A stretch of 64,000 nucleotides of DNA from positions 6,820,001 to 6,884,000 of the forward strand of contig CM119372.1 of the NCBI GenBank assembly GCA_051294905.1, read 5' to 3'. Of the stretch, positions 1,075 through 63,391 are shown piece after piece. The translations under genes were made by a program, and so were the position numbers. The notes under the pieces were generated by a model that worked only from the letters and a program-made list of their open reading frames with translations, was not told the DNA's origin and ran no database searches. Within the stretch, counting starts at the first letter, position 1; each line of letters starts with the position of its first letter. The stretch is from Botryllus schlosseri. Its lineage: Eukaryota.

Positions 1075-1990
1075 TTGCAAATGGTTGCCCGACATTAGGG
1101 CTGTTCAAAAATAACTTATTTTTCTGGATTCCAGTCGTTCAGTTTTCAAATTGTCAGGTTACCCTAAAAAACGTTGCACACCGAATTTGGTTCAATTCTA
1201 ACAAGTATAGGGCTCCGCGGATCCAATTAAAATTTTTAATTGAAACAGGAGAATTAAAAAAAAAATTTAAATTTTTCTGTCAACCCCATGAAATTGTTGA
1301 GCTGTCTTAAGAGACGATGCAAAACAAATTTGACTCAATTCCAACTAGTAGAAGTGGAGTTATTAAAGTTTTTCGTTGATAATCCTCGGATTATACACCA
1401 ATCAAGGATAATCCGAGAAATATCAACGAAAAACTCCAATAACTCCGCTTCTACAAGTTGGAATTGAGTCAAATTTGTTTTGCATCGTCTTTGCAGCCAG
1501 CTCAACAATTTCATGGGGTTGACAGAAAAATTTAAAATATTTTTTTTTAATTTTCCTGTTTAAATTAAAAATTTTAATTGGATCCGCGGAGCCCTATACT
1601 TGTTAGAATTGAACCAAATTTGGTGTGCAGCGTTTTTTTTAGGGTAACCTGACAATTTCGGCTGGAATCTAGGAAAAAAAAGTTATTTTTGAACAGCCCT
1701 ACCCGACATATGAGCATGCGACACAATAGAAAACGACAGTTCAGCAAGGAACACATCAGCATGCGTCACTTCAACATGTGACTGTATAACCCAAAAACTT
1801 ACCCTAACCAGAAACATAGCCCTGAAATTAACCCTTAGATATATCCTAACCCTAACCCAATCATAAAGCCTAACCCTAACCCAACCATAAACTCAGCCCT
1901 AACCCGTAATTTAACCCACATGCTCATGTGTCGCATGCCAAATTGTCGCATGCTGTAATGTCGCATGCTCATATGTCCACGGACCATTGC
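1075..1990. mobile_element. Short element with 18-bp subterminal inverted repeats and a degenerate (CCCTAA)-like core, interrupted by the 1096-1701 hAT
   Basis: gacatatgagcatgcgac at 1705-1722 and its exact reverse complement at 1960-1977; internal ccctaac/cctaac repeats and gtcgcatg tandem units; a homologous inverted copy lies at 32461-32906. Confidence 0.75.
1096..1701. mobile_element. Non-autonomous hAT-type foldback MITE (606 bp, almost fully palindromic)
   Basis: TIRs tagggctgttcaaaaataactt.../...aagttatttttgaacagcccta; exact 8-bp TSD cccgacat (1088-1095, 1702-1709); arms complementary to a ~13-nt loop near 1400-1415. Confidence 0.93.
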
Positions 1991-2124
1991 AAATGTACGA
2001 CGTAATATCGATGACAGTTGATTCGTCACCATCTCACATAGTATATGGGTAATTATGGACAATGTCCGCTGAAGGTATGTCAGTGTAGAATTCCCTGGAT
2101 TATCTCGGCTACTAACGTGTGTAT

Positions 2125-3075
2125 TAGGGATGGTGTGAACGTGAGGTTCACGTTCGCGTTCTGTGTGTGAACCTCGGAAAATTTGAGGTTCGCGTTCACA
2201 ACAGAACCTTGGTAGGTTCTGCACTGTGAACCTTTTTCATATATTGCAATTTTCACTTCATTATAACATCTTTGGTTCAAATTTATTGACTTTCAACTGC
2301 GGGCCACTCTATGCATGGAGCTGGCAGCATAAACATTCAACACTAAACGAGCATGCCCCTGACAATCTCAAAAATTTACATGTATTGTTACAAAAGTTTG
2401 CTCGAAATATCCAGCATTCCGTTTGTGCATATTAGTGTCTCTGTGCTGTGAGCTTGACCCGCAATCACATGACATCAAGAGCGAAATACACTGTATTTTG
2501 TCAGCAAATGATCCTTATTCAACCAATCAATGAGATTGATATCGTCTTCTGATGTAAAAATCTAGCAGGCGCGCGTACGGGGTCAATCTTGACTACATAT
2601 GTATACTGTATCATAAAAACCAAATCCGTGCGACTGGAGTGTTGGCTATACTGCTGTATAACTTGTTAATCGGTAGCAAGTATAAAAACCCATTTTACAC
2701 TCTGCTCAATATCCATGTGGCAATACTCAGACGCCGAACACATTGTCCGATCAGGTCGAAATTGTTGGCAAAGCGACGCAAGATACTGATTTTATGGGAT
2801 TATTATATCATTTGATTGCCCCAGTTGATACATTTGGCGACGTTTCAAACGTCAATATCTACTTAAGTACTGAGCTATTATGTGGCCCCGAGTCGTCGCT
2901 CGGTATCGTGTACAGTAGATTAATATAGGCAATCACCTAATTGAAATATGGGGTTGAAATTACCAATATGACGTCACGTGACGTCATGAGGTTCACGTTC
3001 GTGTTCACACAGAACCTTTCAAAAAGGTTCACGTTCACACGAACCTGAACCTTTCAGAGGTTCACACCATCCCTA
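2125..3075 (+). mobile_element. Non-autonomous hAT element, family A copy 1 (951 bp)
   Basis: TIR tagggatggtgtgaac/gttcacaccatcccta; exact 8-bp TSD gtgtgtat (2117-2124, 3076-3083); subterminal ggttca/gttcac repeats. Strand is arbitrary. Confidence 0.95.
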
Positions 3076-4789: not shown

Positions 4790-4994
4790 CGGGACAAACG
4801 AGGCATATTCCGCACAGTAGCGACGTCTCCGAATCGTCGAGCTTCATTGACAGTATGTGTCTCGCGAAATAAAACACGGAGTCGGTCAACGGACCGAAGC
4901 CGCACCTTTCTATTTGATCTCGATTCAAGGTTAATCCGTCTGAGAACGTCAGCGTTTCTTGTTCCGGGTCGTAGCTATTGCATATTCGAAGAAG
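4790..4994 (-). CDS. RAR: RAR exon: LBD helix 5 to helix 9
   Basis: Acceptor gtttcAG, donor GTAAGA; 205 nt; [68 protein letters not shown]. Confidence 0.96.
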
Positions 4995-7900
4995 CTGAAA
5001 CGGACAAGAGAGGCTTACCCCCCATCCCGGCGGCGCCTATGAAGTTGTGCACAGAGAGGAGATATTGCACCACACAATAGAGTTGGTCAACTACAACATG
5101 TACACATTGGAACTACATTTATACCTACAGAGTTTTTTTTAATTAGACCATAATTATGATTACTGAATTCGCAAAAACGAAAACTGAACTAAATTCCTAA
5201 CGACAAAAATCAAGTTCACTTTATATCGATTCCTAGTTCATTTTCAGAAGAATCAAAATGGCAAATGTCTGTACACCACGCTCGGCTCGTTTAGCACTAT
5301 ATGCAGTTCTCCCGTACCAATTTCAAGAAACCCAGAAATTAGATTAAAATTAAAATCAGAGTCTAGAAAATTTCATAAATTAGATTATAATTTGATTACA
5401 CGCATTTCGCTTTCATAGACAACTAGTATTATCTACGAAGACTGCCTCACAACGCATGTAAAATTTTCGTGGCAAATGGGTCCGAGCTTTCAGATATCCA
5501 AGCCTGCGTTGGACAGATAAACACTGCAAGTACCGATGATCGGCTAGTACTGCAGTTACAAACGATGCGGCCATAAGATGGCGACTGTGGCATTATGACA
5601 TCACCAAGCCTCATTCAATGAGGCATCTCCCACTATCCATCAGACCGCGTATAGGCACTAAAATATTTTGAGTGATTTTCCTATTTTTGTTGTGTTCAAA
5701 AATCGAAGGGATAACCGCATACGTCACCCGAATCCTAGTTTCGGTATCTCCTACTTACTAGTCGACGTCAACATGCAACCGGCTTACACGGAACATATTT
5801 ACGACTTGGCCCCGACAACCATGAGAGTGGGGTTGCATAATGTAGCACCCGGATCATTTCGTTTATAGCCGCTAAACCAATTATTAACCTCATTCGACCT
5901 CAAGGCAATGCCGTAAACAACATACTTTCGATTCATGCCGAATGCCTAATCATACCCATAAAGGGAGTATGTTCATGTCGCTGTTGAAATCAGCTCTGCG
6001 TAAAAATGGTCTGTGTGCCCACTGCCCATAGTGCCCAAACAAGTAAATTACAGGCACCATCCACTATTTTGGACAGAGTCTCACGTTCGGCCTACCATAA
6101 CCTCAATCGTCCTCGTTCGATACGTTGTTTACGCAATTGAACGCATGCGAAGGGCGCGTTTGAACAGATGGCAAATTCATTTTTAGCAATCAAACGCAAT
6201 ACGACGCCCTGGCTTTCGGGCGCATATTTCTCGTAAACGCTCTCGTTAATGTTAATGACGTTATCGGTGTTTTACGACAGTCGCGTAGCATACAGGAATG
6301 GAAACGTTATCATTATCATTATCGTAACTTTATTTCTTTGAGGAATTCTTACTAGTATATCCAGGCAAGCTGCTTTCAGCATGGTGACTTGGTCTGGAGT
6401 GGAGCACTCGTCGAAGCCCGGAACTCGCTTGGCGAATTGCACGATGTTGACAATACATTTCGCCGAACGATCGCAAAATTCTTGCCACAGTGTCAAATCT
6501 AATGAGCCGTCAGTAGACATCGGCGTCTCGCGCTGAAAAACATCGGTCCATGAGACGTCAACGCCTTGATAACACGCGGAGATACGTAGCCAGACACCAG
6601 TAGGAGGTCACTGTGCCAAAGGACAATTCAGCGTGTTGATGATGATGAGAATAACATTAACTTTGAAACACAATCGTTTCGGAAAAACGAAATTCATCCG
6701 TCGACACATTACTGATGTACAAAGACATTGTAAGTAACCAGTCGCTAGTAAATAACTAGATTTAGGCGACGCCTCGTGAATGGAGAAATTTTATTCTAGG
6801 TTAAAATGACAATGTGATTTATACAACGGCTCCTTCCTGAGATAAAGCATGTATAAGTTATCGGGATAATCGAAATATCATTATAACATTGATAGATTAC
6901 ACAATGTGAGTCATAGCGCGATATGATGGAAAGCATTCTGCAACTAGACGACAGAAATTGATAACGACGGGCCTCTCTAAACAGAAACAGCCCGCATTTA
7001 TTGTTCCCGATGTCTACAAGGCGCAGTGACAGAAGCGGCGCATTTCATCTTTTTAAAACAATGAGGAAGTTAGAAGATGCGCATGATCGACGATCATTGA
7101 TTGTTTACGCGTAATGGCAAAGTTAAAATGACATCAGACTGTTAATGCGTAAAATATTGCCGAGCTGTGTTCTTGATATATTTTCACACCCAAGATCATT
7201 GATGTGCATGTGCATTACTCATACTAGGTCACGTGAGAATTGAGGGCTGGGGCAACTAACATGTTGTCCCATGACCGCTACTAAGCCATGGATGTAACTG
7301 GGTGATCTTTTAGGGCAGTACTCGTCAAACGGTGTGCACGGTGCGCCAGAGGGTACATCCAAACATGCATGCGTACACAAGTACGAAAACGGACGCAAGG
7401 GTGCATGATAAACTTGTCACACTATAGCAGTAGTTCTAAACCTAGGGGTGTCGTTCGCGAATGGGCTGAACTTTTCTAGTTATAGGCAACCAATTACATG
7501 CAATATACATACATTGAATGCTTCTAAGCATACAAGGTGCACGAGTTCGTCACAACAACTTTAGGGGTTCACCACAAAAAAGGATGAAGAAAACTGCTTC
7601 AAGGTACGCCGAAATTTCCGCTATTACGTCAACGGGTATGAGATGACATTACATTCCTGCCGAGCTGCGGGCTTGAATCCATGCGATTCAGCGGCATATT
7701 TCTCAAGCACATGATTAGTGAAAACGGCCTCACTGCTGCCATTCCGTCAGTAAATTTATACTGGTAAAGACGCTATGCTGAGAATTTCGGACCCGAAGTT
7801 TCTATTATAAAACAGCATCAACGAAACTGTTAGGTGATTTCCCAAGAAGTGCCGACCCCACTTGCGGTTAACATGGCACGATAACTGCTGCGTAGGCCCT

Positions 7901-10900
7901 ACTCACCGAACGAAATTTGTTCACGTCTTTAATGTCGACAAACGTTTCAACGTGGGCACGAGTGATAGTATCGATAAGTCGTCTGATTTGCACCATTGAA
8001 GTTGTGAATTCCACCGACGGACGGGCAGGCAAGCACGACTTTTCCTTCCCCCTCTTTTTTCGGCGATCGTTTCGGACAGCTGAAATAGAAATGAGTACAC
8101 TTACTGCATACGACACCAACGTACTCCATTCTAGCGTAGAATTCAGTTGTGTATCACAACGCTCATACAAGACCATTTGTCAATACTTGACAGCGGCGAA
8201 GATACCGTTGTCTGGTAGGTATGTGAGTCTAGGTTCGGCTTGACCGATGAGCAGTAACTTGTAGGGATGGTGTGAACCTCTGAAAGGTTCGGGTTCGTGT
8301 GAACGCGAACCTTTTTGAAAGGTTCTGTGTGAACACGAACGTGAACCTCGTGACGTCATATTGCTAATTCCAACCCTATCTTTCAATGAAGTGATAGCCT
8401 ATATTAATGTACACGATACCTAGCGAAGACTCGGGTCACATAATGTCACATTGCTGAAGTACATATTGGCGTTTTAAACGCCGCTAAATGTTATCAACGG
8501 ATATAATAATCTCATAATATCAATACATTCCGACGCTTTGCCAACAATTTCGACGAGGACTTACTAGGGAATATAAGCTTACGCCTTAACGGTCTTTGCC
8601 AGACCGGACAATGTGTTCGGAGTCTGAGTATTGCTACATTGATATTGAGCAGAGTGTAAAACGAGTTTCTATACTCGCTACCGATACCATAAGCAACAAG
8701 TTGTATAGCAGTAGCCAGCACCTTAATCGCACGGATTTGGTTTTAATGATACAGTAAAGATATGAAGTCAAGATTGACCCCGTACGCCCGCTCGATATTT
8801 TACATTAAAAAACGATATCAATGTCATTGATTGGTTGAATAAGCATCATTCGCTGACTACGTATATCGCTCGTGATGTTGTGTGATTGCGGGTCAAGCTC
8901 ATAGCAGAGAGTCACTAAATATTCACAAACGGAAAGCTGGATATTTCGAGAAATTTTTTGTAACAAAAAAGCAAGTAAAACTTTTAAGGTTGTCAAGGTG
9001 CATGCTCGTTTATTAGTGTTGATTTTTTATGCTGCCAGCGCCATGCATACAGTGACACGCAGTTGAAATGCAATAAATTTGAACCAAAGATCTTATAACG
9101 AAGTGCAAATTACAATTTACCAAAAAGGTTCACAGTGCAGAACCTACCAAGGTTCTGTTGTGAACACGAACCTCTAAATTTCCGAGGTTCACACACAGAA
9201 CGCGAACGTGAACCTCACGTTCACACCATCCCTAGTAACTTGCCTTCGCAAAACACCGCGACTCTTGTTTACTTAACTCTGATTAATGATTGATATCAAA
9301 GCACCGCGCCTTACAGCGTATGTTTTTGATAGCTGCATGCTCGAAAACCACTGTTCCCCTTCGATGTGCGTTGTCAAAAATAGAATGGGCTGATAATTAG
9401 GCTTCGTATCCGACTTTGCGGACTGGTGTGCTATGTTTTTTACAATAATCAATCACAAAATAAGGCGAAGCCGTTTCGAACATGCATTACGTACGCGAGT
9501 TCTTACTGCACCGGTACATCCTGCGAGGCGGAAATGTGAATAGTGAACGAACGATCAAACAAAGATGACACCATTCACCATCAGTTTTTGCATGACTTTC
9601 AGCGACGACCCGTGACATTATTTAGTTAGGATTGCGTCACCTCGTCTGGCGAAATAACTTCAAATATCCTCTAGTCCGAAAAAACATACGAGACATGTAG
9701 TACAAAGTAACTGGGAAGTCGTATTCAACCTGCAGCATTGTCACACAGTGCAATGAAATAGGTATGGTCGACAAAGTACCAAATTTCCTTTAATGTGATG
9801 TTGAACTGGCTATTATGCAGCCATCGGTCTGTATCACAAAGACGTTTTCAAGATCTATATAATCGCCGCTCTAAAGCGCGTTCCGTCGCACACAGCTTCG
9901 AAATAGTTCAACGGCGGCCGAGGTCATCGAGTACACGCCAGCAATCCCAAGAGAGGTGAGAAAATTAGTTCTGCACGTAGCGTCTCGCTATCGCAAACCA
10001 ATAAAATATTGAACGCGCGGCCTCGGGGTCATCAGTTCATAGGACGGATGAAGTTAAAAGTGTCATAGTAGATCGAATATCTTGCGCTTGAGAACTACCG
10101 GATGCAGACAACTTGAGTAATTTGCTTTACCGCGAGCGTAATAATCACAAGTTGACCTTGCGATTATATAGTAAAGCTGTCGGGAATATTCAAAATGTAT
10201 GCCCCACGCGTGAACTGAGTTCATATGAACTCACTTAAACGAGGAAGACGGAGAGCGTGAACTGCGTTACACTTTTACACACGTTAATAAATTTGGGTGC
10301 ATCACATTGCCAAGTTCACAGTGTATGACATTGTCATTAAGAGACGGGAAATATAGTCCGAAGGCCTGGACGTGAGAGGACAAATCGCGTATGGACAAAT
10401 AACCAATGGATGCTCAATATTAAGTTCATTCAAACGCGAAACGACGAAACAGCATAAAGCTAAACGCTAGTTACTGAGCGTCGACGTCATTCATGATTGC
10501 CGTTGGTTTCCAATCTCATATTGTAGTTCCATTGCGTTTCCTGACTAGAAACAGGCGCTAGCAATCTGAGCATACGAAACAAATGGCTGAACGTTCGGTT
10601 GAATGAGAACACGCGGCATTTTGCGGTAGAAGGCTGAGTCGAATTCACCACCAGAATATCGGCGTCACGAAAGGGCGTACAAAGACTGCCGGCACCGATA
10701 TGCCGCTCCGCGAACAGCAAAATATATTGGCATCATGACATGAGTAATGCAACCGTGTCAACATGTTTGCTACTATGCGAGCATATCGATATCGCGCCTT
10801 CCCGTACGCCGGCATGAACTCGGCGAAGTCAAATGATTCATTGGCCTGAAATCCACTCCAGCGAAAGTTCACAAACGGACAAATATTCCAAGTTGACGCG

Positions 10901-13900: not shown

Positions 13901-16900
13901 GCAAAACTGTATATCATATATCATATTTCGTATTCATTCATTCTATCCATACATTAGTCGTATTCAACAATCCATAGTGGTACCACAATTGGAATCGATA
14001 AACGTGAAATTGACTTACATTCTCTGAGCATACCGGACTTGATACATTTCTGAAAACGACAATATTGACACCGGCTCCTCGTCTGTTTATTGATTATGCA
14101 GGATTTATTTCGATGACACGAGTATTCCACGTTCTTCTGGACAGTCCTTCTGAAGAATCCCTGTAGTGCAAATTAGCAACTGTAACAGCCCGACCATACC
14201 ACGTGGCAACAGTATATACATCAAACTTGCTAATTGCAATCCGTAATGGCAGATTTACAAACGGATGGAACGTATAACTTACCAGTCAAGATAGACTTGA
14301 AATTTCAATCAAAAGTCAAATGCAAAGAGACGATTTCAAAGTGGTAAGACCTATTTGAAGATTCGTAAAGTCATCCTAACACAGCACTACAGATTGCAAC
14401 AAATCATTAGGATTAACAACGCCAACTTCGACGACAATTCGACGCACACAGATGGCGACGAAGTACAGAAAGACCGATGAAACGAGCAGTCGGGTAACAG
14501 CGCAAGATTCATATTTACGAAAGTATCAAATGAAAAATTGATGACGCTGGCGCCATATACAGCCCAATCCAAAAGCGTTTTACATGGTCACGTAAAACCG
14601 TATTTGAGTAATCATTAAATTGTCACGTGTTTCCAAGACTCCTTCCCAGTCAATAAAATCGATTATCGACGTACTCAACAGGTCAAATACATTGAGTGTT
14701 TTAAGACTATCGACCGAGTCCCAGTAGACACCTACACTCCATAGATGCTATAAATTGAAAGGTCATTGGTCGTGGTTCTTCTGCTTCGTTTATTTATTAT
14801 TTTTATCATTTCAAAACACCACAAGATTGCGATACAATGAAGAGATAGGACGGTGTAGAAAAGACTTGGGCTAGTCTTTCAATCAGACACCTCCACTGGC
14901 CCAGTGAGCGTGTAGTTATAAGAGACATGGAATTGGAGATACCATAAAACAAAAAAGGACATGAAATGAACCGGTATGTGTCCGTTATAGAAATCCATAG
15001 TCTGTTCGTGGGCCGGTAATCTCGAACAAGGATTAGTAAAACAGTTATGGTTACATAGTCCTGATGTAACCCAACTGTATAACCGACATTGAGGGCCGCA
15101 GAGCACTACGAGTGTCCAGTACTTTTTCAGAACGCAATAAGCCGGGTCATTATTAGAGGTGACGTCTACTAGAATAAGTACTTTTTCAGATATTGCTTCC
15201 GCATTCACGCCTTGTGACTTGGTAATTGGGTCCAAACGGCTAACACATGACAGCCGATAAGGTGTCGGCGTATTTACGTATGGGGCGTGTATCATTTCAT
15301 GAACACTGCAAATAGCAGCGCTCTGCGAATTTAGATGTTGCCGATGCTTCTTTGACACAGGGTGAGAAAGGCTTGAAAAGCCTGCTATCATTATTCCTCG
15401 ACTCAGTAATGTCAACAACGCAAAGAGCGCTTTCGGCCGCGTTGGAATGTGACTTTATAGATTACGGCGTTGTTTACCAACGTACCAGTACCATTGATTA
15501 TTCACCTAGTCTGTCCAACTTCTTTGCACAGTAAGCACACACACAACCTGTGTGAACCGTTTTCAAAGATTGTTGTTGATATTCAGCCAAAGGATTTTCA
15601 TTTTTGTGAATTTAACCACAAGATGTTACCAGGTCCAAAGGAATTGATGATTTTCACTTCAGTTTTATATTATCGTACTCTGATTCCAGATCCCTTCATT
15701 AAATACCACGATTGGAATCAGATAAGTCACTTGTTATTACATAAATCATATATCATCGCAAGCTCCAAACATATGTGCGTAATCCAGATGATAGAATACA
15801 TAGATGCTCGCGCGCTGTATACATAACAAGTATAGTACAGTGATCGGGAAGCGTATACCAGCTCGTATACCAACGGTTCGCGACACGAGTTCATTCAAAG
15901 CCTAAAGGGATAAACCATTAAATCCAAGTGTTGAAAATCGAATGCCAGTAAAGCGAAAACGCACCGAATCACGATTTGTGCAGTGCGCACGAACTCGCCA
16001 GACAGAGTTCAATCGCGTATCAGCGGACATAGCCGAACTCGATAAAGCCAGACGGGTTGAATCAACAGAGAGGCAGCGGAGGAAGGTAACAGTACCGAGA
16101 TAATTACAACCGACGCGCACCCGAACGTTAGGTCAAGCCGTGACATTACTTCTGTTCGTTTACGCGGCTCTGCGATCCTACGGGCGAATCGCAAGCGTTG
16201 CGAAAACCTTCACGCAAATGCTAGCCCGACAAATTATGCGATTACAAATACTGACTTGCGACCAGGGCACAGTATGGCATGGTATGGAACGAAACGAAAT
16301 TGGCGTGGAAATTTCAAAGTATGGTATGGGAACGTTTGGCAGTTTTGCCAGAACCATGAAAAAGGCTCTACTTTTGATTTGTCAAGTCGATTGCATACCT
16401 CCCAAAACACAGACAGATCTCTGTTCAAATCTCAAATTTTAACTCAGACCCTGGTCAAGATATTTTTGAAGAGAACAATGCGACGATGATTAGGCAACCT
16501 ATACATCGCTGATATATGACACAAAGACCTTGGGAATTGAATTGATGCATCACGGCTTGTTGTATGAATAATTCCATTCAAAATAATTACAATGCAAACG
16601 CTGGATAATTTCAACACATGACAAATAGATCTGAAAAATCTGAAATATTGGGGAAACGAGAAAGTATGGAAAATATATCATATATCTTATGGAAGAATGT
16701 TGCTATTGTATTGAAAATTGTAAGTATGGTAGGGAACCAGTGCAGCGGGTATGGAATATTGAAATTTCCTGTCCCATACCATACCAACCATACTATGCCC
16801 TGCGATTGAAACTATGACGGACTGCCCGTACAATCGGCATTCGCTTTACACAGGATAACGAATCAAGTCAAAACAAGGTATCGCGGAATTCATAACTCCA

Positions 16901-18163
16901 ACCAAAACAATCCCGACAGAATCTGTAATCCCTAGAATGCAATTCAGTTTAACGGCGACAATGGCCTGGAAACTGGTGAATAGTACGCTTTCAATGCAGC
17001 GAAACGCCGCATTATGCCTTCCACAATTCTTACGCTCTCATCACGTTTCCGCGTATTGGCGAGAGCGCAATCATGTGCACATTGTGCAGTTGCAGAATGC
17101 TGTAGCAACGTGCATACGCCCGAAAATGCCCATACGACGTTACCTGTTATACACGCTTGATATAGAGAATGGATATGGGCGCTATTACGGTTCGTATCGA
17201 AAATGCTGATTTCAATAGTCGCGCTATAATGCCGTGGAATTCGACCTGACAGATGTATTGCATCCGAGGGTATTACCGAACGTATTCCTCAACGCGACTG
17301 TGAGAGTGTGATGTGAGTACACGAGCTAGTTGCCGCCCGGCGTACTCACGTTTGCTAGTTATCCGCTTTGATGGCAGATGTGGCATCATATTGCGTGATA
17401 TCGTCGCGACAGCTACATAAAATACGTGGAATGTGTTAACGTCAAAAACGCGGCCATGTTTTTAAATAACGATTCTGCGTCAAAGTTGCTTTCATAAAAT
17501 TAATGCCGTTGGCCGCGAACGAAGGCATGTATCGAGAATGTAGAATATTTCCTCAATAATGTCGTGGTGCACAAGAGCCTACCCAATTAGTTTCGACTGA
17601 TTACGAAATATTACAGGTCAACAGTATTGTAAATGCAATCGTTTATGAGTTAGGTCAAGTTTTACTTCGCGCACGGCTCTAAAATGTCGAAAACTACCGT
17701 ATGTATTTGCGACGAGGTTCACAGATCATATAAGAGAGGTTAATGAACTTTTCGGCCGGGAGTTACCTGATACGTAGACGCTGTCTGTGGAAAAACAGAA
17801 TAAGATGCGACCAAATGGTCAGTACATTTCTAGCAGAAGCGGACTTCGTTACGAGTCATACAGTTTCCATACATCAATCACACGGCTACTATGACAGACT
17901 TTGAACAACACCGTTAAACTATAGATAACTAACCTACATAGTTAAACAGACCAATCATGCCCACAATTATGTCACGCGGAAAAGAATACTGGTCTTTACC
18001 TTGCAGCCTTCGCACGATGATACGCCGTAGTGATACCCCGATGATCGATCGGAACAAACCAAACACGGTTTATATACTCGGGGAGGGGGCGATGGCGAAG
18101 TCGCGGAGCCCATCGAGTCCAAATCGGATGACCCGTCGCTATAACATGCCAGCATGTCTCTCC
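4790..18163 (-). CDS. RAR: Retinoic acid receptor (NR1B), partial gene model: five coding exons 18163-18000, 14160-14019, 8079-7907, 6532-6353, 4994-4790; N-terminal and helix 9-12 exons not located
   Basis: All five exons have AG/GT boundaries and join in one frame (phases 1,0,1,0,0,1). Translation gives [33 protein letters not shown]|[21 protein letters not shown]...GMLRE|[10 protein letters not shown]...|...[26 protein letters not shown]...LKAACLDIL|LLRIC...[10 protein letters not shown]...[10 protein letters not shown]. Motifs and intron positions match vertebrate RAR genes as I recall them. Confidence 0.97.
5155..5425 (+). repeat. Old interspersed repeat, inverted homolog of 11620-11925
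   Basis: Shared blocks ttactgaatt, aaatgtctgtac, ggctcgttt, cagttctcc and gcatttcgctt are colinear with the reverse complement of 11620-11925. Strand is arbitrary. Confidence 0.7.
6353..6532 (-). CDS. RAR: RAR exon: LBD helices 3-5
   Basis: Acceptor tttttcAG, donor GTAAGA; 180 nt; [30 protein letters not shown]...[14 protein letters not shown]. Confidence 0.96.
7315..7440 (+). repeat. hAT-like MITE fragment shared with 61987-62080
   Basis: cagtactcgtcaaacggtgtgcac...caagggtgcatgataaacttgtcacactatagcag aligns with cagtgttcttcaaccgttgtgcac...caagggtgcatggcgtacttgtcacactaaagcag. Confidence 0.55.
7907..8079 (-). CDS. RAR: RAR exon: T-box/hinge and helix 1
   Basis: Acceptor ttctatttcAG, donor GTGAGT; 173 nt; [14 protein letters not shown]...[13 protein letters not shown]. 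Confidence 0.95.
8262..9234 (-). mobile_element. Non-autonomous hAT element, family A copy 2 (973 bp), inverted relative to copy 1
   Basis: Same TIRs; exact 8-bp TSD gtaacttg (8254-8261, 9235-9242). Its reverse complement is colinear with 2125-3075: first ~50 nt identical, interior roughly 80-85% by eye. Confidence 0.95.
9680..9810 (+). repeat. Relic of the interior of the family B hAT (22475-23502)
   Basis: catacgagacatgtagtacaaag...ttgtcacacagtgcaatgaaataggtatggtcgacaaagtaccaaa aligns with the internal region of both family B copies; no TIRs visible. Confidence 0.65.
10026..10039 (+). promoter_or_regulatory. Perfect DR2 retinoic acid response element (candidate)
   Basis: GGGTCA-tc-AGTTCA matches RGKTCA-N2-RGKTCA and sits in a cluster of 11 perfect half-sites (9905-10428). 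Function untested. Confidence 0.6.
11620..11925 (-). repeat. Old interspersed repeat, inverted homolog of 5155-5425
   Basis: See 5155-5425. Confidence 0.7.
11953..12051. repeat. Perfect 42-bp tandem repeat, ~2.35 copies
   Basis: Unit tgtgtagctataattataattctagtctaatttagaaaatac starts at 11953, 11995 and 12037. Confidence 0.95.
14019..14160 (-). CDS. RAR: RAR exon: recognition helix and second zinc finger (not in the supplied ORF track)
   Basis: Acceptor gcactacAG, donor GTAAGT; 142 nt; [47 protein letters not shown]. Confidence 0.97.
14789..15035 (-). mobile_element. 3' end of a CR1/L2-type LINE (or LINE-tailed SINE)
   Basis: Shares caccacaagattgcgatacaatgaa...agtctttcaatcagaca with the ORF2-bearing copy at 35241-35853. 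Confidence 0.8.
16263..16802. mobile_element. MITE with 15-bp TIRs (hAT-like CAGGG end)
   Basis: cagggcacagtatgg / ccatactatgccctg (1 mismatch), subterminal tatgg/ccata repeats; no matching 8-bp TSD seen. Confidence 0.7.
18000..18163 (-). CDS. RAR: RAR exon: proline-rich B region and first zinc finger to the P-box (CEGCK)
   Basis: Acceptor tttttcctcAG (intron ends 18164), donor GTAAAG at 17999; 164 nt; encodes [32 protein letters not shown]. Confidence 0.96.
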
Positions 18164-19160: not shown

Positions 19161-22100
19161 CACGACGAATTTGGATGCAGTTACACCGGCCGCCGGATCG
19201 GCGGAAGTATATAAAGTCGTTAGGACAGACTGTCATTGAAGGTTGCAAAGCCGATAAATATTTTACAGCCGTGTTTGACCTCGCCAATTACTCTTTTTCG
19301 GCCAAAGGTTATGCCCAATGCAACTTTCAACGGCGAATTGAACTCAGCGCGAGCTGTTCGTTATATTGGTGACAATACTCCAGGATTTAATACTGGAATG
19401 CGGATTAAAAACTTGCGCGTACGTTTAACAAAGAATCAACAAAGACCTATTATTAAACTCGAGCGTCAACGCACTGCCGAATGCTGGACATAAACGAACC
19501 TCTATTTGCAACTTACACAAGAGACATATCATACGAATATACATTACCCCAGTAAATTGCGAGACAGTTACTATTAAGGAGTCATCTAAGGGGTAATAAG
19601 AAAGCGCGTCATAAGTTTGACAGCGCGTTACCACCAACACGTATACCGTACTAAAAGAACGAGCAAACACTACATATGTTGTATACCCTCCGCATTGGGC
19701 CAACACCCGAAGTCTAGTAAATATACATATGTAAACGTATTTGCCACGAGAAGTCAATGTCCGCTGTGAATAAATGTATTTCTAGTTTCTAATTGATTGC
19801 ATCATGGCTGTCATCCCACGCGCCATGCAAGTATATATAAAGTTACACAGTCGCACACCCTAAGGCAACAACGCATTAATAAGGTTCACTTCATTGATCT
19901 AAATCACGCCAATGCGCCACGTTCGCACGTATTTCTATACCAAGACATATTCAGGTATACGCACATCGGCACAAACACCATGGTGCGTTGCAGGGATATC
20001 TAAAACTAGTTATCCATGGTGCGTTGGAAGATACCCTCTCTGATGAGCTCATACTTACTTGAAGTTAACCAATCGTATGCAGTGGTTTGGTATCCGATGG
20101 AGGTTGAACTTTTAGCGATGTGTTTATCCTCGAATGTTTTCTGAAATGTGAAACGAATTGAACAATCTTTTAGTGACGCACCCGAGGTGTCATATTTCCC
20201 GGCTTAACAATATCAGAAATGTACTATGTAGGGCAGCATACATCCCATAACTGTGGAAATTATCAGTTCACTCGAGTGCACGTCGAACCGGCCAAACACG
20301 GGAAATGAATGACAGCGAGCCATACGTGTTCATCAGTAATGATTAATATCAACTTGTCGGAGACGTGAGGGCGACAATAGGGCACAAAGTCTACAATCGT
20401 TATCAAGGCCTTTCGGGCGCATCGATTACATTTGAACCGGCAACCGACATAATATGCTGTCAAACCGAAATGTCGTACACGCAAAAGTCATAAGTTCATG
20501 CAGTCGACGTGCCTGCACATTGCGGTCATAAGGTTGTATTCTTCGTACAGTATACGCAACTCATACATAGTAAAACATGCGAGAGTCACTCACTGGAAAA
20601 TGCATATCTGCTTTGATCTCTTTTTTGACTGAACTTTCCTCAGACGTACCTTCCGATTTCATAGAGTCCTCCATAGCAAACTTAGGTAAATGGATATTAA
20701 ATATTAATGACTAGTATTCATTGCTACAGAAATATTAGAACACACATGATATACGGTAGGTAGAAGACATATAGTTAAACAAATCAGCTAGCACTCAAAG
20801 GCATGCACTCATTTAGTCGGAATATGCTCGGCTTAATATGTGGCAGCAAATATGCCTATAGCTTGTCCGCAGCTAAATATACGTAACTCAAATTGAAGGC
20901 TGAGGTGTCTAATTACGAAAATCGTTTATAGTAATATTCTAATGCTGACCTTCTACCTCTTCATCAAATGTTAAAACCGAGGCATAATAAAGTGACTGAT
21001 TAACAGATAGCAGGCTACAGCGTGGGGGACTTGAGTTTACCATCACCAGCTGAATAAAACTCGCTTTGCGGGGTTCGACCGGCCAACGACCACACTTGGT
21101 AATCGCAAAATAACAGTGTCGATAACGCGCAAATCCCTACTCTTGCTAACCATATAATTGCTAGCGGCATGACTCGAAACAGGCTGTTCCAAAAATGGAA
21201 GAAAGCAATCCATAGCTGGTGGCTGCTCACGATGCCGAAGTTCATTTGATATTCTCTCGTAGCGTAGACCTGTGTTTCTAATGACTCTGAACTGGCTGCG
21301 AAGGTCAATCGCGACAATGTATTTACCGCGACGCAGTTCCATACGAATGAGGCGAATGCATTCTGTCAAATATTTCCATCTAGGCGTAGCATCATAGAAC
21401 CTTCAACCTTTCGTGTCGATCAGCATACCAATTGCTATCAAAACATTTCATGTCTGACTAGTCTGGAATTCTACTGTGTCAGAGTTCAGGTTCAATTTTT
21501 GATCACACAGCTGTAGTTCCTTGTTAGTCTTAGGTAACCACAGCATCACCAAATCCGAAAAATCGTCTTTCTCCCCAAACTATTGATCATTGGCTGGTAC
21601 TACCGCTGAAGCATACCGTTGCCTACGAGGGTAAGCAAATGCACGAGCCCAAACAAAGCTACTGTTGTATATTTAAGATTCTACATTTCAATGTATCTAC
21701 AGGTTGGTAAACGCAAACGAATCTAGAAAGTAATCCTATTAATCACAGTGTAGCGGCGCCCTAACTGAGTACAGAATCGCCTAGTAGGTGCTAATGTGAC
21801 TTGTACCAGCCATAATTTTTTGCGTCTTGGACTGTTGGGTCGAATAAATTTTCTCGGCCAGATCAAGTATCTAATTTTTAAAATAAAATTCCCTGATAAG
21901 CTGTTCAGGTCGTGACATCTTTTATAAGCGCTAAATCTCGTAAATACAATCCTCGTGAAACAAGTAGAGGCTGATTTAAGTAACAGGCATTCACCTAAGG
22001 TTTAAACCAACGGACATACCACGTTACTTTTATCAGTGGGTTAGAAAATGGAGGAAGCTTTTAATACAATAATATCTATCCTGCTACAACCCAATGTGAT

Positions 22101-27746: not shown

Positions 27747-63391
<35,645 letters not shown>

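What the first reader, a model, noticed from the sequence alone, without database searches (positions are those of the whole stretch)
4974..6469. RAR ligand pocket: the carboxylate-anchoring Arg is lost from helix 5 and a new Arg appears in helix 3
Seen: the LBD reads FCDRSAKC (codon CGT, 6469-6467) and LLRICNSY (codon AGC, 4976-4974). Aligned without gaps to human RARalpha (FSELSTKC; ILRICTRY), these are L231->R and R276->S. Established: R276 (RARgamma R278) forms the salt bridge to the retinoic acid carboxylate, and L231 (RARgamma L233) lies next to the carboxylate. W225, F228, S232, C235, L269, R272, F286, S287 and F302 are all retained; I270 is Leu. Inference: a compensatory relocation of the anchoring charge from H5 to H3, or a receptor with altered or lost RA affinity or a different ligand.
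Basis: partly seen in the sequence, partly recalled or inferred. Interest (0 to 1): 0.82.

Follow-up and report, generated by a model that had tools for sequence, protein, structure and literature searches.

The report
Second sea-squirt RAR with moved arginine
This sea-squirt gene is a second copy of the retinoic acid receptor. Its ligand pocket is almost identical to the vertebrate one, but the arginine that normally grips the hormone's acid group has been lost from helix 5 and an arginine sits opposite it on helix 3. A distant relative conserves the same arrangement, so it is a natural, testable case of a hormone receptor with a rebuilt anchor.

Summary
CGT at 6469-6467 puts Arg at the position of human RARalpha L231, and AGC at 4976-4974 puts Ser at R276. 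Both lie in canonical GT-AG exons of a minus-strand RAR gene.

The gene is not the classical ascidian RAR. It is the ortholog (85% identity over 282 codons) of a second Styela clava RAR, P0167. S. clava also has a canonical RAR with Leu and Arg at these sites. P0167 has the same Arg/Ser pair, written with different codons, and synonymous sites between the two species are saturated. Selection is therefore holding the pair.

Of 26 RARgamma ligand-contact positions, P0167 differs from vertebrates only at these two and at I412F. In a tree the gene groups with six unnamed, probably tunicate, RAR-like sequences. Five of them already have the H3 Arg and all six keep the H5 Arg. On the favoured topology the H3 Arg therefore came first and the H5 Arg was lost later.

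Whether the H3 Arg anchors a carboxylate is inference only. No binding data exist, and the model's coordinates could not be read. I found no paper on this swap. Two Rar paralogs were reported in salps in 2026.

Verdict: a real, conserved new variant of a known receptor kind; moderately to highly interesting. The scan had not reported this swap on other DNA.

The parts
20063..20098 (-). Candidate A/B-domain exon fragment (IGYQTTAYDWLT)
   Evidence: Weak tblastn match (E 0.26) to residues 44-55 of the Styela clava ortholog P0167 (LPYQTTAFDWLS), upstream of the DBD exon and in the right order. Exon borders were not determined.
18000..18163 (-). Exon for the end of the A/B domain and the first zinc finger (…[29 protein letters not shown]). 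An in-frame ATG lies at 18155, just after the acceptor.
   Evidence: Acceptor cag|G and donor AAG|GTAAAG. 81% identical to P0167 residues 54-111.
14019..14160 (-). Exon for the second zinc finger ([47 protein letters not shown])
   Evidence: Acceptor acag|GGATTC and donor AAT|GTAAGT, ending in phase 1. tblastn matches to tunicate RARs.
7907..8079 (-). Hinge and helix 1 exon ([14 protein letters not shown] … [16 protein letters not shown] … KFRS)
   Evidence: Acceptor ttcag|CT completes the split Ser codon; donor TCG|GTGAGT. 72% identical to P0167.
6353..6532 (-). Exon for helices 3-4 of the ligand-binding domain (180 nt)
   Evidence: Acceptor tttcag|CGC and donor CTA|GTAAGA. Gapless alignment to RARgamma, alpha and beta ligand-binding domains.
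6467..6469 (-). CGT = Arg at the helix 3 position of human RARalpha L231 / RARgamma L233
   Evidence: S. clava has AGA (Arg) at the same position.
4790..4994 (-). Exon for helices 5-7 of the ligand-binding domain (205 nt)
   Evidence: Acceptor tttcag|CTT and donor CCC G|GTAAGA. Gapless alignment to RARalpha, beta and gamma ligand-binding domains, E 1e-23.
4974..4976 (-). AGC = Ser at the helix 5 position of human RARalpha R276 / RARgamma R278, the carboxylate-anchoring Arg
   Evidence: S. clava has AGT (Ser) at the same position.

Best explanation
The window holds the 5' two thirds of a functional second retinoic acid receptor gene of an ascidian: the DBD, the hinge and helices 1-7 of the ligand-binding domain. 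It is the ortholog of Styela clava XP 'retinoic acid receptor beta-like' (P0167). This gene lineage arose by a duplication inside tunicates and exists alongside the classical tunicate RAR, which keeps the usual Leu(H3)/Arg(H5).

In this paralog the hydrophobic retinoid cavity is held in the vertebrate state. The polar end is rebuilt. The helix 5 Arg that salt-bridges the retinoic acid carboxylate is Ser. The helix 3 residue whose backbone contacts the carboxylate through a water molecule is Arg. Lys (RARgamma K236) and Ser (S289) are kept.

Most likely mechanism (inferred, not shown): the receptor still binds a retinoid acid or a close metabolite. The carboxylate is held by the helix 3 Arg together with the retained Lys and Ser, probably with changed affinity or isomer preference. 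This would give ascidians a second, pharmacologically distinct retinoid receptor.

Shown here: gene structure, orthology, conservation of both residues under purifying selection, and conservation of the rest of the pocket. Favoured but not secure: the H3 Arg predates the H5 loss. Not shown: any ligand binding, and the direction in which the H3 Arg side chain points.

The confidence given (0.5) is for the whole statement including the inferred mechanism. The identity of the gene and the conservation of the pair taken alone I would put at about 0.9.
For: Gene and residues.

Ortholog: P0167 shares 239 of 282 aligned residues and the motifs [11 protein letters not shown] and LRICNSY. Both key residues are kept with different codons. 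71 of 96 four-fold sites differ, which is saturation, and dN is 0.106; only exons align at the DNA level. This indicates long-term purifying selection.

Two genes in one species: in S. clava the canonical RAR P0099 and P0167 lie on contigs of 32.7 Mb and 25.6 Mb.

Pocket: 23 of 26 RARgamma ligand-contact positions in P0167 are in the vertebrate state, and all 16 of the 18 visible in the window apart from the swap pair. Canonical tunicate RARs differ at five or six other positions.

Coactivator surface: in P0167 the AF-2 Glu (IFTEML) and the helix 3 FAKR Lys are intact.

Fold: the AlphaFold2 model of the P0167 ligand-binding domain has pLDDT 85. The Arg lies inside helix 3 and the Ser at the end of helix 5, both in blocks with pLDDT of 90 or more. 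The model superposes on agonist-bound RARalpha and RARgamma with TM 0.95-0.96 and rmsd 1.5-1.6 A.

Tree: window + P0167 (100/100) is sister to six RAR-like sequences (94/84). That group is sister to the canonical tunicate RARs (95/88), apart from vertebrates. Grouping the paralog with vertebrates is rejected, p-AU 0.033. All three tunicate groups share a one-residue insertion in the H11-H12 loop that vertebrates and the invertebrate outgroup lack.

Sister group: Arg(H3) in 5 of 6 sequences, Arg(H5) in 6 of 6.

[quoted passage not shown] Leu233 is one of the 25 ligand-contact residues (PMC6947571). An annelid RAR binds ATRA with the carboxylate near the N-terminal part of H3 and without using the H5 Arg (PMC5821490).
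Against: There are no binding, transactivation or structural data for this paralog in any species.

From memory of 1990s mutagenesis (Soprano laboratory; those papers are not in the searchable library), changing this Arg in RARalpha or RARbeta greatly weakens RA binding. Loss of RA binding is therefore the simple default.

The sister group carries both arginines, so the H3 Arg has some role that does not depend on the loss of the H5 Arg.

The long stem branch of the paralog (1.2 substitutions per site) and an AU test that does not reject a position next to the canonical tunicate RARs (p = 0.08) leave the order of events open.

An unchecked first-stage note (s1-237987) says that the AF-2 Glu of this very gene, outside my window, is Gln. 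If true, that would argue for altered activation in this species.

No cDNA of the window species was found.
Confidence: 0.5

Rival explanations
1. Changed ligand. The paralog keeps a retinoid-shaped cavity but no longer recognises a carboxylate through the classical clamp. It senses a different head group (retinal, retinol, an oxidised or conjugated retinoid) or another lipid. The H3 Arg has a role unrelated to anchoring.
For: The H5 Arg is the main anchor in vertebrate RARs (PMC11203493; PMC5821490). The cavity-lining residues are conserved, which argues for a ligand of retinoid shape. A canonical RAR coexists in S. clava, so the duplicate is free to take on a new function. From memory, mutating the equivalent Arg in RARbeta shifted retinoid specificity (Tairis et al. 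1995; not checked here).
Against: Lys236 and Ser289, the other polar partners of the carboxylate, are kept, and a new basic residue appears right at the carboxylate end. A neutral head group would not need this. No candidate ligand is known.
Confidence: 0.27
2. Ligand-independent receptor. The paralog has lost hormone binding and acts as a constitutive repressor or activator, or as a competitor for RXR and for RAR response elements. The pocket residues are conserved only because they form the hydrophobic core.
For: Loss of the anchoring Arg. Mollusc RARs show that RAR orthologs can lose RA binding and stay functional (PMC5398557; PMC6947571). The DBD is strongly conserved. An unchecked note reports an altered AF-2 in this species (s1-237987).
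Against: Mollusc RARs that do not bind RA differ from human RARgamma at 9 to 11 of the 25 contact residues (PMC6947571). This paralog differs at 3 of 26, and it is closer to vertebrates there than the ATRA-responsive canonical tunicate RAR is (PmRAR, PMC1500811). The S. clava ortholog keeps the AF-2 Glu and both charge-clamp lysines.
Confidence: 0.18
3. Artefact or decaying gene: an assembly error, or a pseudogene drifting after duplication.
For: The H8-H12 exons are not in the window, so the whole reading frame could not be checked here. No transcript of this species was found in the protein collections.
Against: Five exons are intact, with canonical splice sites and conserved phases. Protein identity to the S. 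clava ortholog is 85% although synonymous sites are saturated. Both residues are the same in the two species with different codons.
Confidence: 0.02

Closest known systems
Vertebrate retinoic acid receptors RARalpha, RARbeta and RARgamma (NR1B1-3)
   Same: Same domain order, the CEGCKGFFRR P-box, and the same exon phases. The LBD exons are 54-62% identical. Best sequence and fold matches are to solved RAR ligand-binding domains. In the S. clava ortholog 23 of 26 ligand-contact residues are identical.
   Different: The helix 5 Arg that salt-bridges the carboxylate is Ser. The helix 3 Leu is Arg. I412 is Phe in the S. clava ortholog. The H11-H12 loop is one residue longer.
Canonical tunicate RAR (Polyandrocarpa PmRAR P0092, Styela clava P0099, Ciona P0101, Clavelina P0164)
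   Same: Same animal group. Shares the one-residue insertion in the H11-H12 loop and TRSRCQ in the DBD. Falls in the same clade against vertebrates (95/88).
   Different: A separate gene: S. clava has both. The canonical copy keeps Leu(H3)/Arg(H5), and PmRAR is activated by ATRA (PMC1500811). It differs from vertebrates at other pocket positions (C237S, M272F, L307M/I, L400I/V, I412M) where the paralog does not.
Salp Rar.a / Rar.b paralogs (PMC12994792, 2026) and the three NR_LBD_RAR genes listed for Botrylloides leachii (PMC5882950)
   Same: Published notices that tunicates can have more than one Rar gene. The six unnamed sister sequences found here may be of the salp Rar paralog kind. Two of them come from what I recall to be ocean plankton metatranscriptomes.
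   Different: Those papers do not examine ligand-pocket residues. I could not obtain their sequences, so identity with the clade found here is not shown.
Platynereis dumerilii RAR (PDB 6EU9, PMC5821490)
   Same: An RAR that binds ATRA without using the helix 5 Arg, with the carboxylate lying near the N-terminal part of helix 3.
   Different: It keeps all four polar residues and binds loosely, with no hydrogen bond to the carboxylate. Here the Arg itself has changed helix.
Thyroid hormone receptors (NR1A), whose carboxylate pocket uses arginines on both helix 3 and helix 5
   Same: The sister-group sequences carry Arg on both H3 and H5, so they have a basic cluster on both helices. The model's next-best fold matches after the RARs are TRs.
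   Different: By my own alignment from memory, the TR helix 3 Arg lies about two turns further along the helix. Sequence scores to TR are far lower (40 against 85 bits).

Membership tests
Nuclear receptor superfamily | C4 zinc-finger DBD followed by a helical ligand-binding domain | tested here: met
   Both zinc-finger exons and the H1-H7 exons are read from the window. The ortholog P0167 carries PF00105 and PF00104.
RAR (NR1B) | Closest sequence and fold relatives are RARs rather than TR, Rev-erb or ROR | tested here: met
   The H5-H7 exon scores 84-86 bits to RARalpha, beta and gamma against 40 bits to TR. The H3 exon scores 60 against 29 bits. The model of the ortholog's ligand-binding domain has TM 0.95-0.96 to RARs and 0.84-0.87 to TRs.
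RAR (NR1B) | Phylogenetic position inside the RAR clade | tested here: met
   The gene nests among tunicate RARs, sister to vertebrate RARs, when rooted on an invertebrate RAR. No TR was in the tree, so exclusion from NR1A rests on the score gap above.
RAR (NR1B) | Conserved retinoid cavity (ligand-contact residues of RARgamma) | tested here: met
   16 of the 18 positions visible in the window, and 23 of 26 in the S. clava ortholog, are in the vertebrate state.
RAR (NR1B) | Helix 5 Arg (RARalpha R276 / RARgamma R278) that salt-bridges the carboxylate of retinoic acid | tested here: not met
   Ser (AGC, 4976-4974). Ser also in S. clava (AGT).
RAR (NR1B) | Binds and is activated by all-trans retinoic acid | not testable with these tools
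   No assay data were found for this paralog in the searchable literature.
Tunicate second RAR lineage (provisional; perhaps the 'Rar.b' of PMC12994792) | A separate gene coexisting with the canonical RAR in one genome | tested here: met
   In S. clava, P0099 and P0167 lie on different chromosome-scale contigs. This was not tested for the window's own genome.
Tunicate second RAR lineage (provisional; perhaps the 'Rar.b' of PMC12994792) | Forms one clade with the unnamed Arg(H3)-bearing sequences (L001, L002, L003, P0329-P0331) | tested here: inconclusive
   Support is 94/84. The alternative, next to the canonical tunicate RARs, is not rejected (p-AU 0.08). The species of origin of those sequences are unknown.

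The most novel reading that the evidence does not exclude
Ascidians carry a second, functional retinoid receptor in which the ligand's anchoring arginine has moved stepwise from helix 5 to helix 3. The helix 3 Arg was gained first, in the paralog lineage. The helix 5 Arg was lost later, on the branch leading to this species and Styela clava. The retinoid cavity stayed in the vertebrate state throughout. This would be a natural relocation of a hormone-anchoring residue that yields a receptor with its own retinoid pharmacology.
Probability: 0.33. Interest if true: 0.78.

Novelty: new variant of a known kind. Interest (0 to 1): 0.64.

Why it matters
RARs are a textbook case for how receptor-ligand pairs evolve. 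The helix 5 Arg is treated as the fixed point of retinoic acid recognition. Invertebrate RARs known to bind RA poorly or not at all keep this Arg, or carry Lys in its place (brachiopod), and differ elsewhere.

Here the reverse is seen. The cavity is kept, the anchor is gone, and a new basic residue sits across the pocket. Selection has maintained this in two deeply diverged ascidians.

If the helix 3 Arg takes over the anchor, this shows a stepwise path by which a binding determinant can change place without loss of function. It would also mean that RA signalling in ascidians runs through two receptors rather than one, which matters for budding, regeneration and retinoid or endocrine-disruptor studies.

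If it does not, the gene is a clean natural experiment on what an RAR does without its clamp.

Either way, four constructs and standard reporter assays would settle it.

Tried and rejected
1. A possible next exon at window ~345-187 (DQLESNDAFANM…) came up as a weak match (E 0.96). I rejected it. It has no proper acceptor or donor and no similarity beyond 12 residues. The S. clava protein finds no H8-H12 exon anywhere in the window.

2. The whole-library protein search with the 66-residue exon returned mostly vertebrate fragments and no close relative. The ortholog was found only when the window exons were aligned to a longer relative and the alignment was used as the query.

3. I tried to name the species behind the unnamed sister sequences through sample accessions, the papers library and a search for the Ciona spliced leader. 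Nothing was found.

4. The ESM Atlas look-up gave only generic nuclear receptor clusters.

5. I looked for the salp Rar alignment in the supplements of PMC12994792. It is not held.

6. The 1990s mutagenesis papers on RAR Arg269 and Arg276 are not in the library. What I say about them is from memory.

7. dN/dS could not be given as a ratio, because dS is saturated.

8. The orientation of the helix 3 Arg in the AlphaFold2 model could not be measured. The tool returns no coordinates.

9. The spliced protein of the window itself was not submitted to structure prediction or to full-length searches, because it has no reference and would have had to be typed. The S. clava ortholog was used instead.
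Full report
**Observation.** Read on the minus strand, 6472-6461 is GAT CGT TCG GCG and 4979-4971 is AAT AGC TAC.

The exons that hold them were searched against all solved structures. The best matches are human RARalpha, beta and gamma ligand-binding domains, and the alignments have no gaps. The H5-H7 exon gives E 1e-23 and 84-86 bits. The H3-H4 exon gives E 7e-16 to 3e-15. Thyroid hormone receptors follow far behind, at about 40 and 29 bits.

In these alignments Arg faces RARalpha L231 (RARgamma L233) and Ser faces R276 (R278).

**Gene model.** Five minus-strand exons lie in the window, all with GT-AG borders and matching phases.

- First zinc finger: 18163-18000, with an ATG at 18155 right after the acceptor.
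- Second zinc finger: 14160-14019.
- Hinge and H1: 8079-7907.
- H3-H4: 6532-6353.
- H5-H7: 4994-4790 (205 nt).

Together they give 285 uninterrupted codons. A weak match at 20098-20063 is probably an upstream A/B exon. No H8-H12 exon is in the window. An earlier first-stage note places the last exons just before the window start. The three exons 173 + 180 + 205 add up to the 558 nt that another note calls an exon cassette.

**What the gene is.** The scan's earlier notes call this a sea-squirt genome.

The classical tunicate RARs all read Leu in H3 and Arg in H5. These are Polyandrocarpa PmRAR (P0092), Styela clava P0099, Ciona P0101, C. savignyi P0163 and Clavelina P0164. They are only about 50-55% identical to the window's LBD exons.

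A profile search that combined the window's exons with a longer relative found P0167, a second Styela clava protein annotated 'retinoic acid receptor beta-like' (429 aa). It is 85% identical to the window over 282 aligned codons and carries the same motifs, [12 protein letters not shown] and MLRICNSY.

S. clava therefore has two RAR genes, on different chromosome-scale contigs. The window gene is the ortholog of the second one in another ascidian.

**Is the pair maintained by selection?** Between the window and the S. clava gene, 239 of 282 aligned codons encode the same residue, but only 94 codons are identical. 71 of 96 four-fold degenerate sites differ. That is saturation, since random expectation is 75%. 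dN is 0.106, and only the exons align at the DNA level.

The H3 Arg is CGT here and AGA in S. clava. The H5 Ser is AGC here and AGT there. Both residues have thus been held through a very long divergence. This rules out an assembly slip, and it rules out drift in a dying gene.

**The rest of the pocket.** In P0167, 23 of 26 contact positions are in the vertebrate state (RARalpha-like S234 and V397). The exceptions are L233R, R278S and I412F. In the window, 16 of the 18 visible positions are in the vertebrate state, and the other two are the swap itself.

The canonical tunicate RARs differ from vertebrates at five or six other positions, yet PmRAR is activated by ATRA (PMC1500811).

P0167 also keeps the AF-2 Glu (IFTEML) and the H3 and H4 lysines of the coactivator clamp.

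An AlphaFold2 model of its ligand-binding domain has mean pLDDT 85. The Arg lies inside helix 3 and the Ser at the end of helix 5, both in high-confidence stretches. The model superposes on agonist-bound RARalpha and RARgamma with TM 0.95-0.96 and rmsd 1.5-1.6 A.

This is the profile of a receptor that still houses a retinoid-shaped ligand.

**History.** I built a maximum-likelihood tree (LG+C20+F+G4) of 28 sequences, rooted on an unnamed invertebrate RAR reconstructed from locus L006.

- Vertebrate RARs fall on one side and all tunicate-type sequences on the other (95/88).
- Within the tunicate side, the canonical tunicate RARs form one clade (100/99).
- Window + P0167 (100/100, stem branch 1.2 substitutions per site) is sister to six unnamed sequences (94/84).

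Forcing the paralog to sit with vertebrates is rejected (p-AU 0.033). Forcing it next to the canonical tunicate RARs is not (p-AU 0.08).

A one-residue insertion in the H11-H12 loop is shared by all three tunicate groups and is absent from vertebrates and the outgroup. This independently supports a duplication within tunicates.

The six sister sequences are a genomic contig, transcripts from sequencing runs, and two contigs from what I recall to be ocean plankton metatranscriptomes. Their species are unknown. Five of the six have Arg at the H3 position, and all six keep the H5 Arg.

On the favoured tree the H3 Arg was therefore present before the H5 Arg was lost, on the branch leading to this species and S. 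clava. If the alternative topology is true, the H3 Arg arose twice.

[quoted passage not shown] Position 233 thus sits at the carboxylate end of the pocket, on the helix facing R278.

My best reading is that the Arg side chain from helix 3 reaches the space left by the lost helix 5 Arg and, with the retained Lys and Ser, still anchors an acidic retinoid. Affinity or isomer preference is probably changed.

There is a precedent for an RAR binding ATRA without the H5 Arg. In the annelid receptor the carboxylate lies near the N-terminal part of H3.

This step is inference.

The rivals are a changed head-group specificity and a ligand-independent receptor. The second is weakened by the pocket's conservation: mollusc RARs that do not bind RA differ at 9-11 of 25 contact residues, against three here.

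**Literature.**

- A 2021 review states that most bilaterian genomes hold a single RAR (PMC7827873).
- A 2026 paper reports two Rar paralogs in salps, without looking at the pocket (PMC12994792).
- The Botrylloides leachii genome paper lists three genes with the RAR ligand-binding-domain signature, labelled as RxR (PMC5882950).

I found nothing on the Arg/Ser exchange. The library lacks most subscription journals, so absence there is weak evidence.

**Verdict.** This is a conserved second RAR of ascidians with a rebuilt polar end in an otherwise vertebrate-like pocket. It is a new variant of a known kind, and it is worth bench tests.

Noticed in passing
window 18155-18163 (-): The first zinc-finger exon has an in-frame ATG eight bases after its acceptor (cag|GGAGAGAC ATG). 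In a trans-splicing animal this could be the start of a short, leader-spliced isoform lacking the upstream A/B exons that the S. clava model has.
   Followed up: no
window 28768-29506 (-): ORFs here read like the C-terminal exons of a dynein heavy chain (…[38 protein letters not shown]…). A second gene therefore lies upstream of the RAR on the same strand.
   Followed up: no
window 1288-1514: Two ORFs on opposite strands encode nearly the same 59-residue peptide (MKLLS.L.RRCKTNLTQFQLVE…). This is a near-perfect palindrome of about 230 bp, probably a small foldback or MITE-like element in the RAR intron.
   Followed up: no
window 1835-2224 (-) and 9135-9293 (+): The same repeat-derived ORF ([30 protein letters not shown]…) occurs in inverted orientation on either side of the three exons 8079-4790. 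This agrees with the inverted transposon pair described in note s1-300934.
   Followed up: no
P0144 / P0147 (ENA fragments): An unnamed invertebrate RAR fragment reads MLRLSSNY, with Asn at the position of the H5 anchoring Arg. Loss of this Arg may therefore have happened independently in another animal lineage.
   Followed up: no
L001:7231-11561 (ENA ERZ21736675): This sister-group RAR-like gene is very compact: all exons from the DBD to AF-2 lie within about 4.3 kb. Its H3 reads Q-R-S-A-R-C, so it has basic residues at both positions 233 and 236 as well as the H5 Arg.
   Followed up: partly
P0099 (Styela clava canonical RAR): One NCBI record names this canonical RAR ortholog 'thyroid hormone receptor beta-like isoform X2'. 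The automatic names of the two S. clava RAR genes are unreliable.
   Followed up: no
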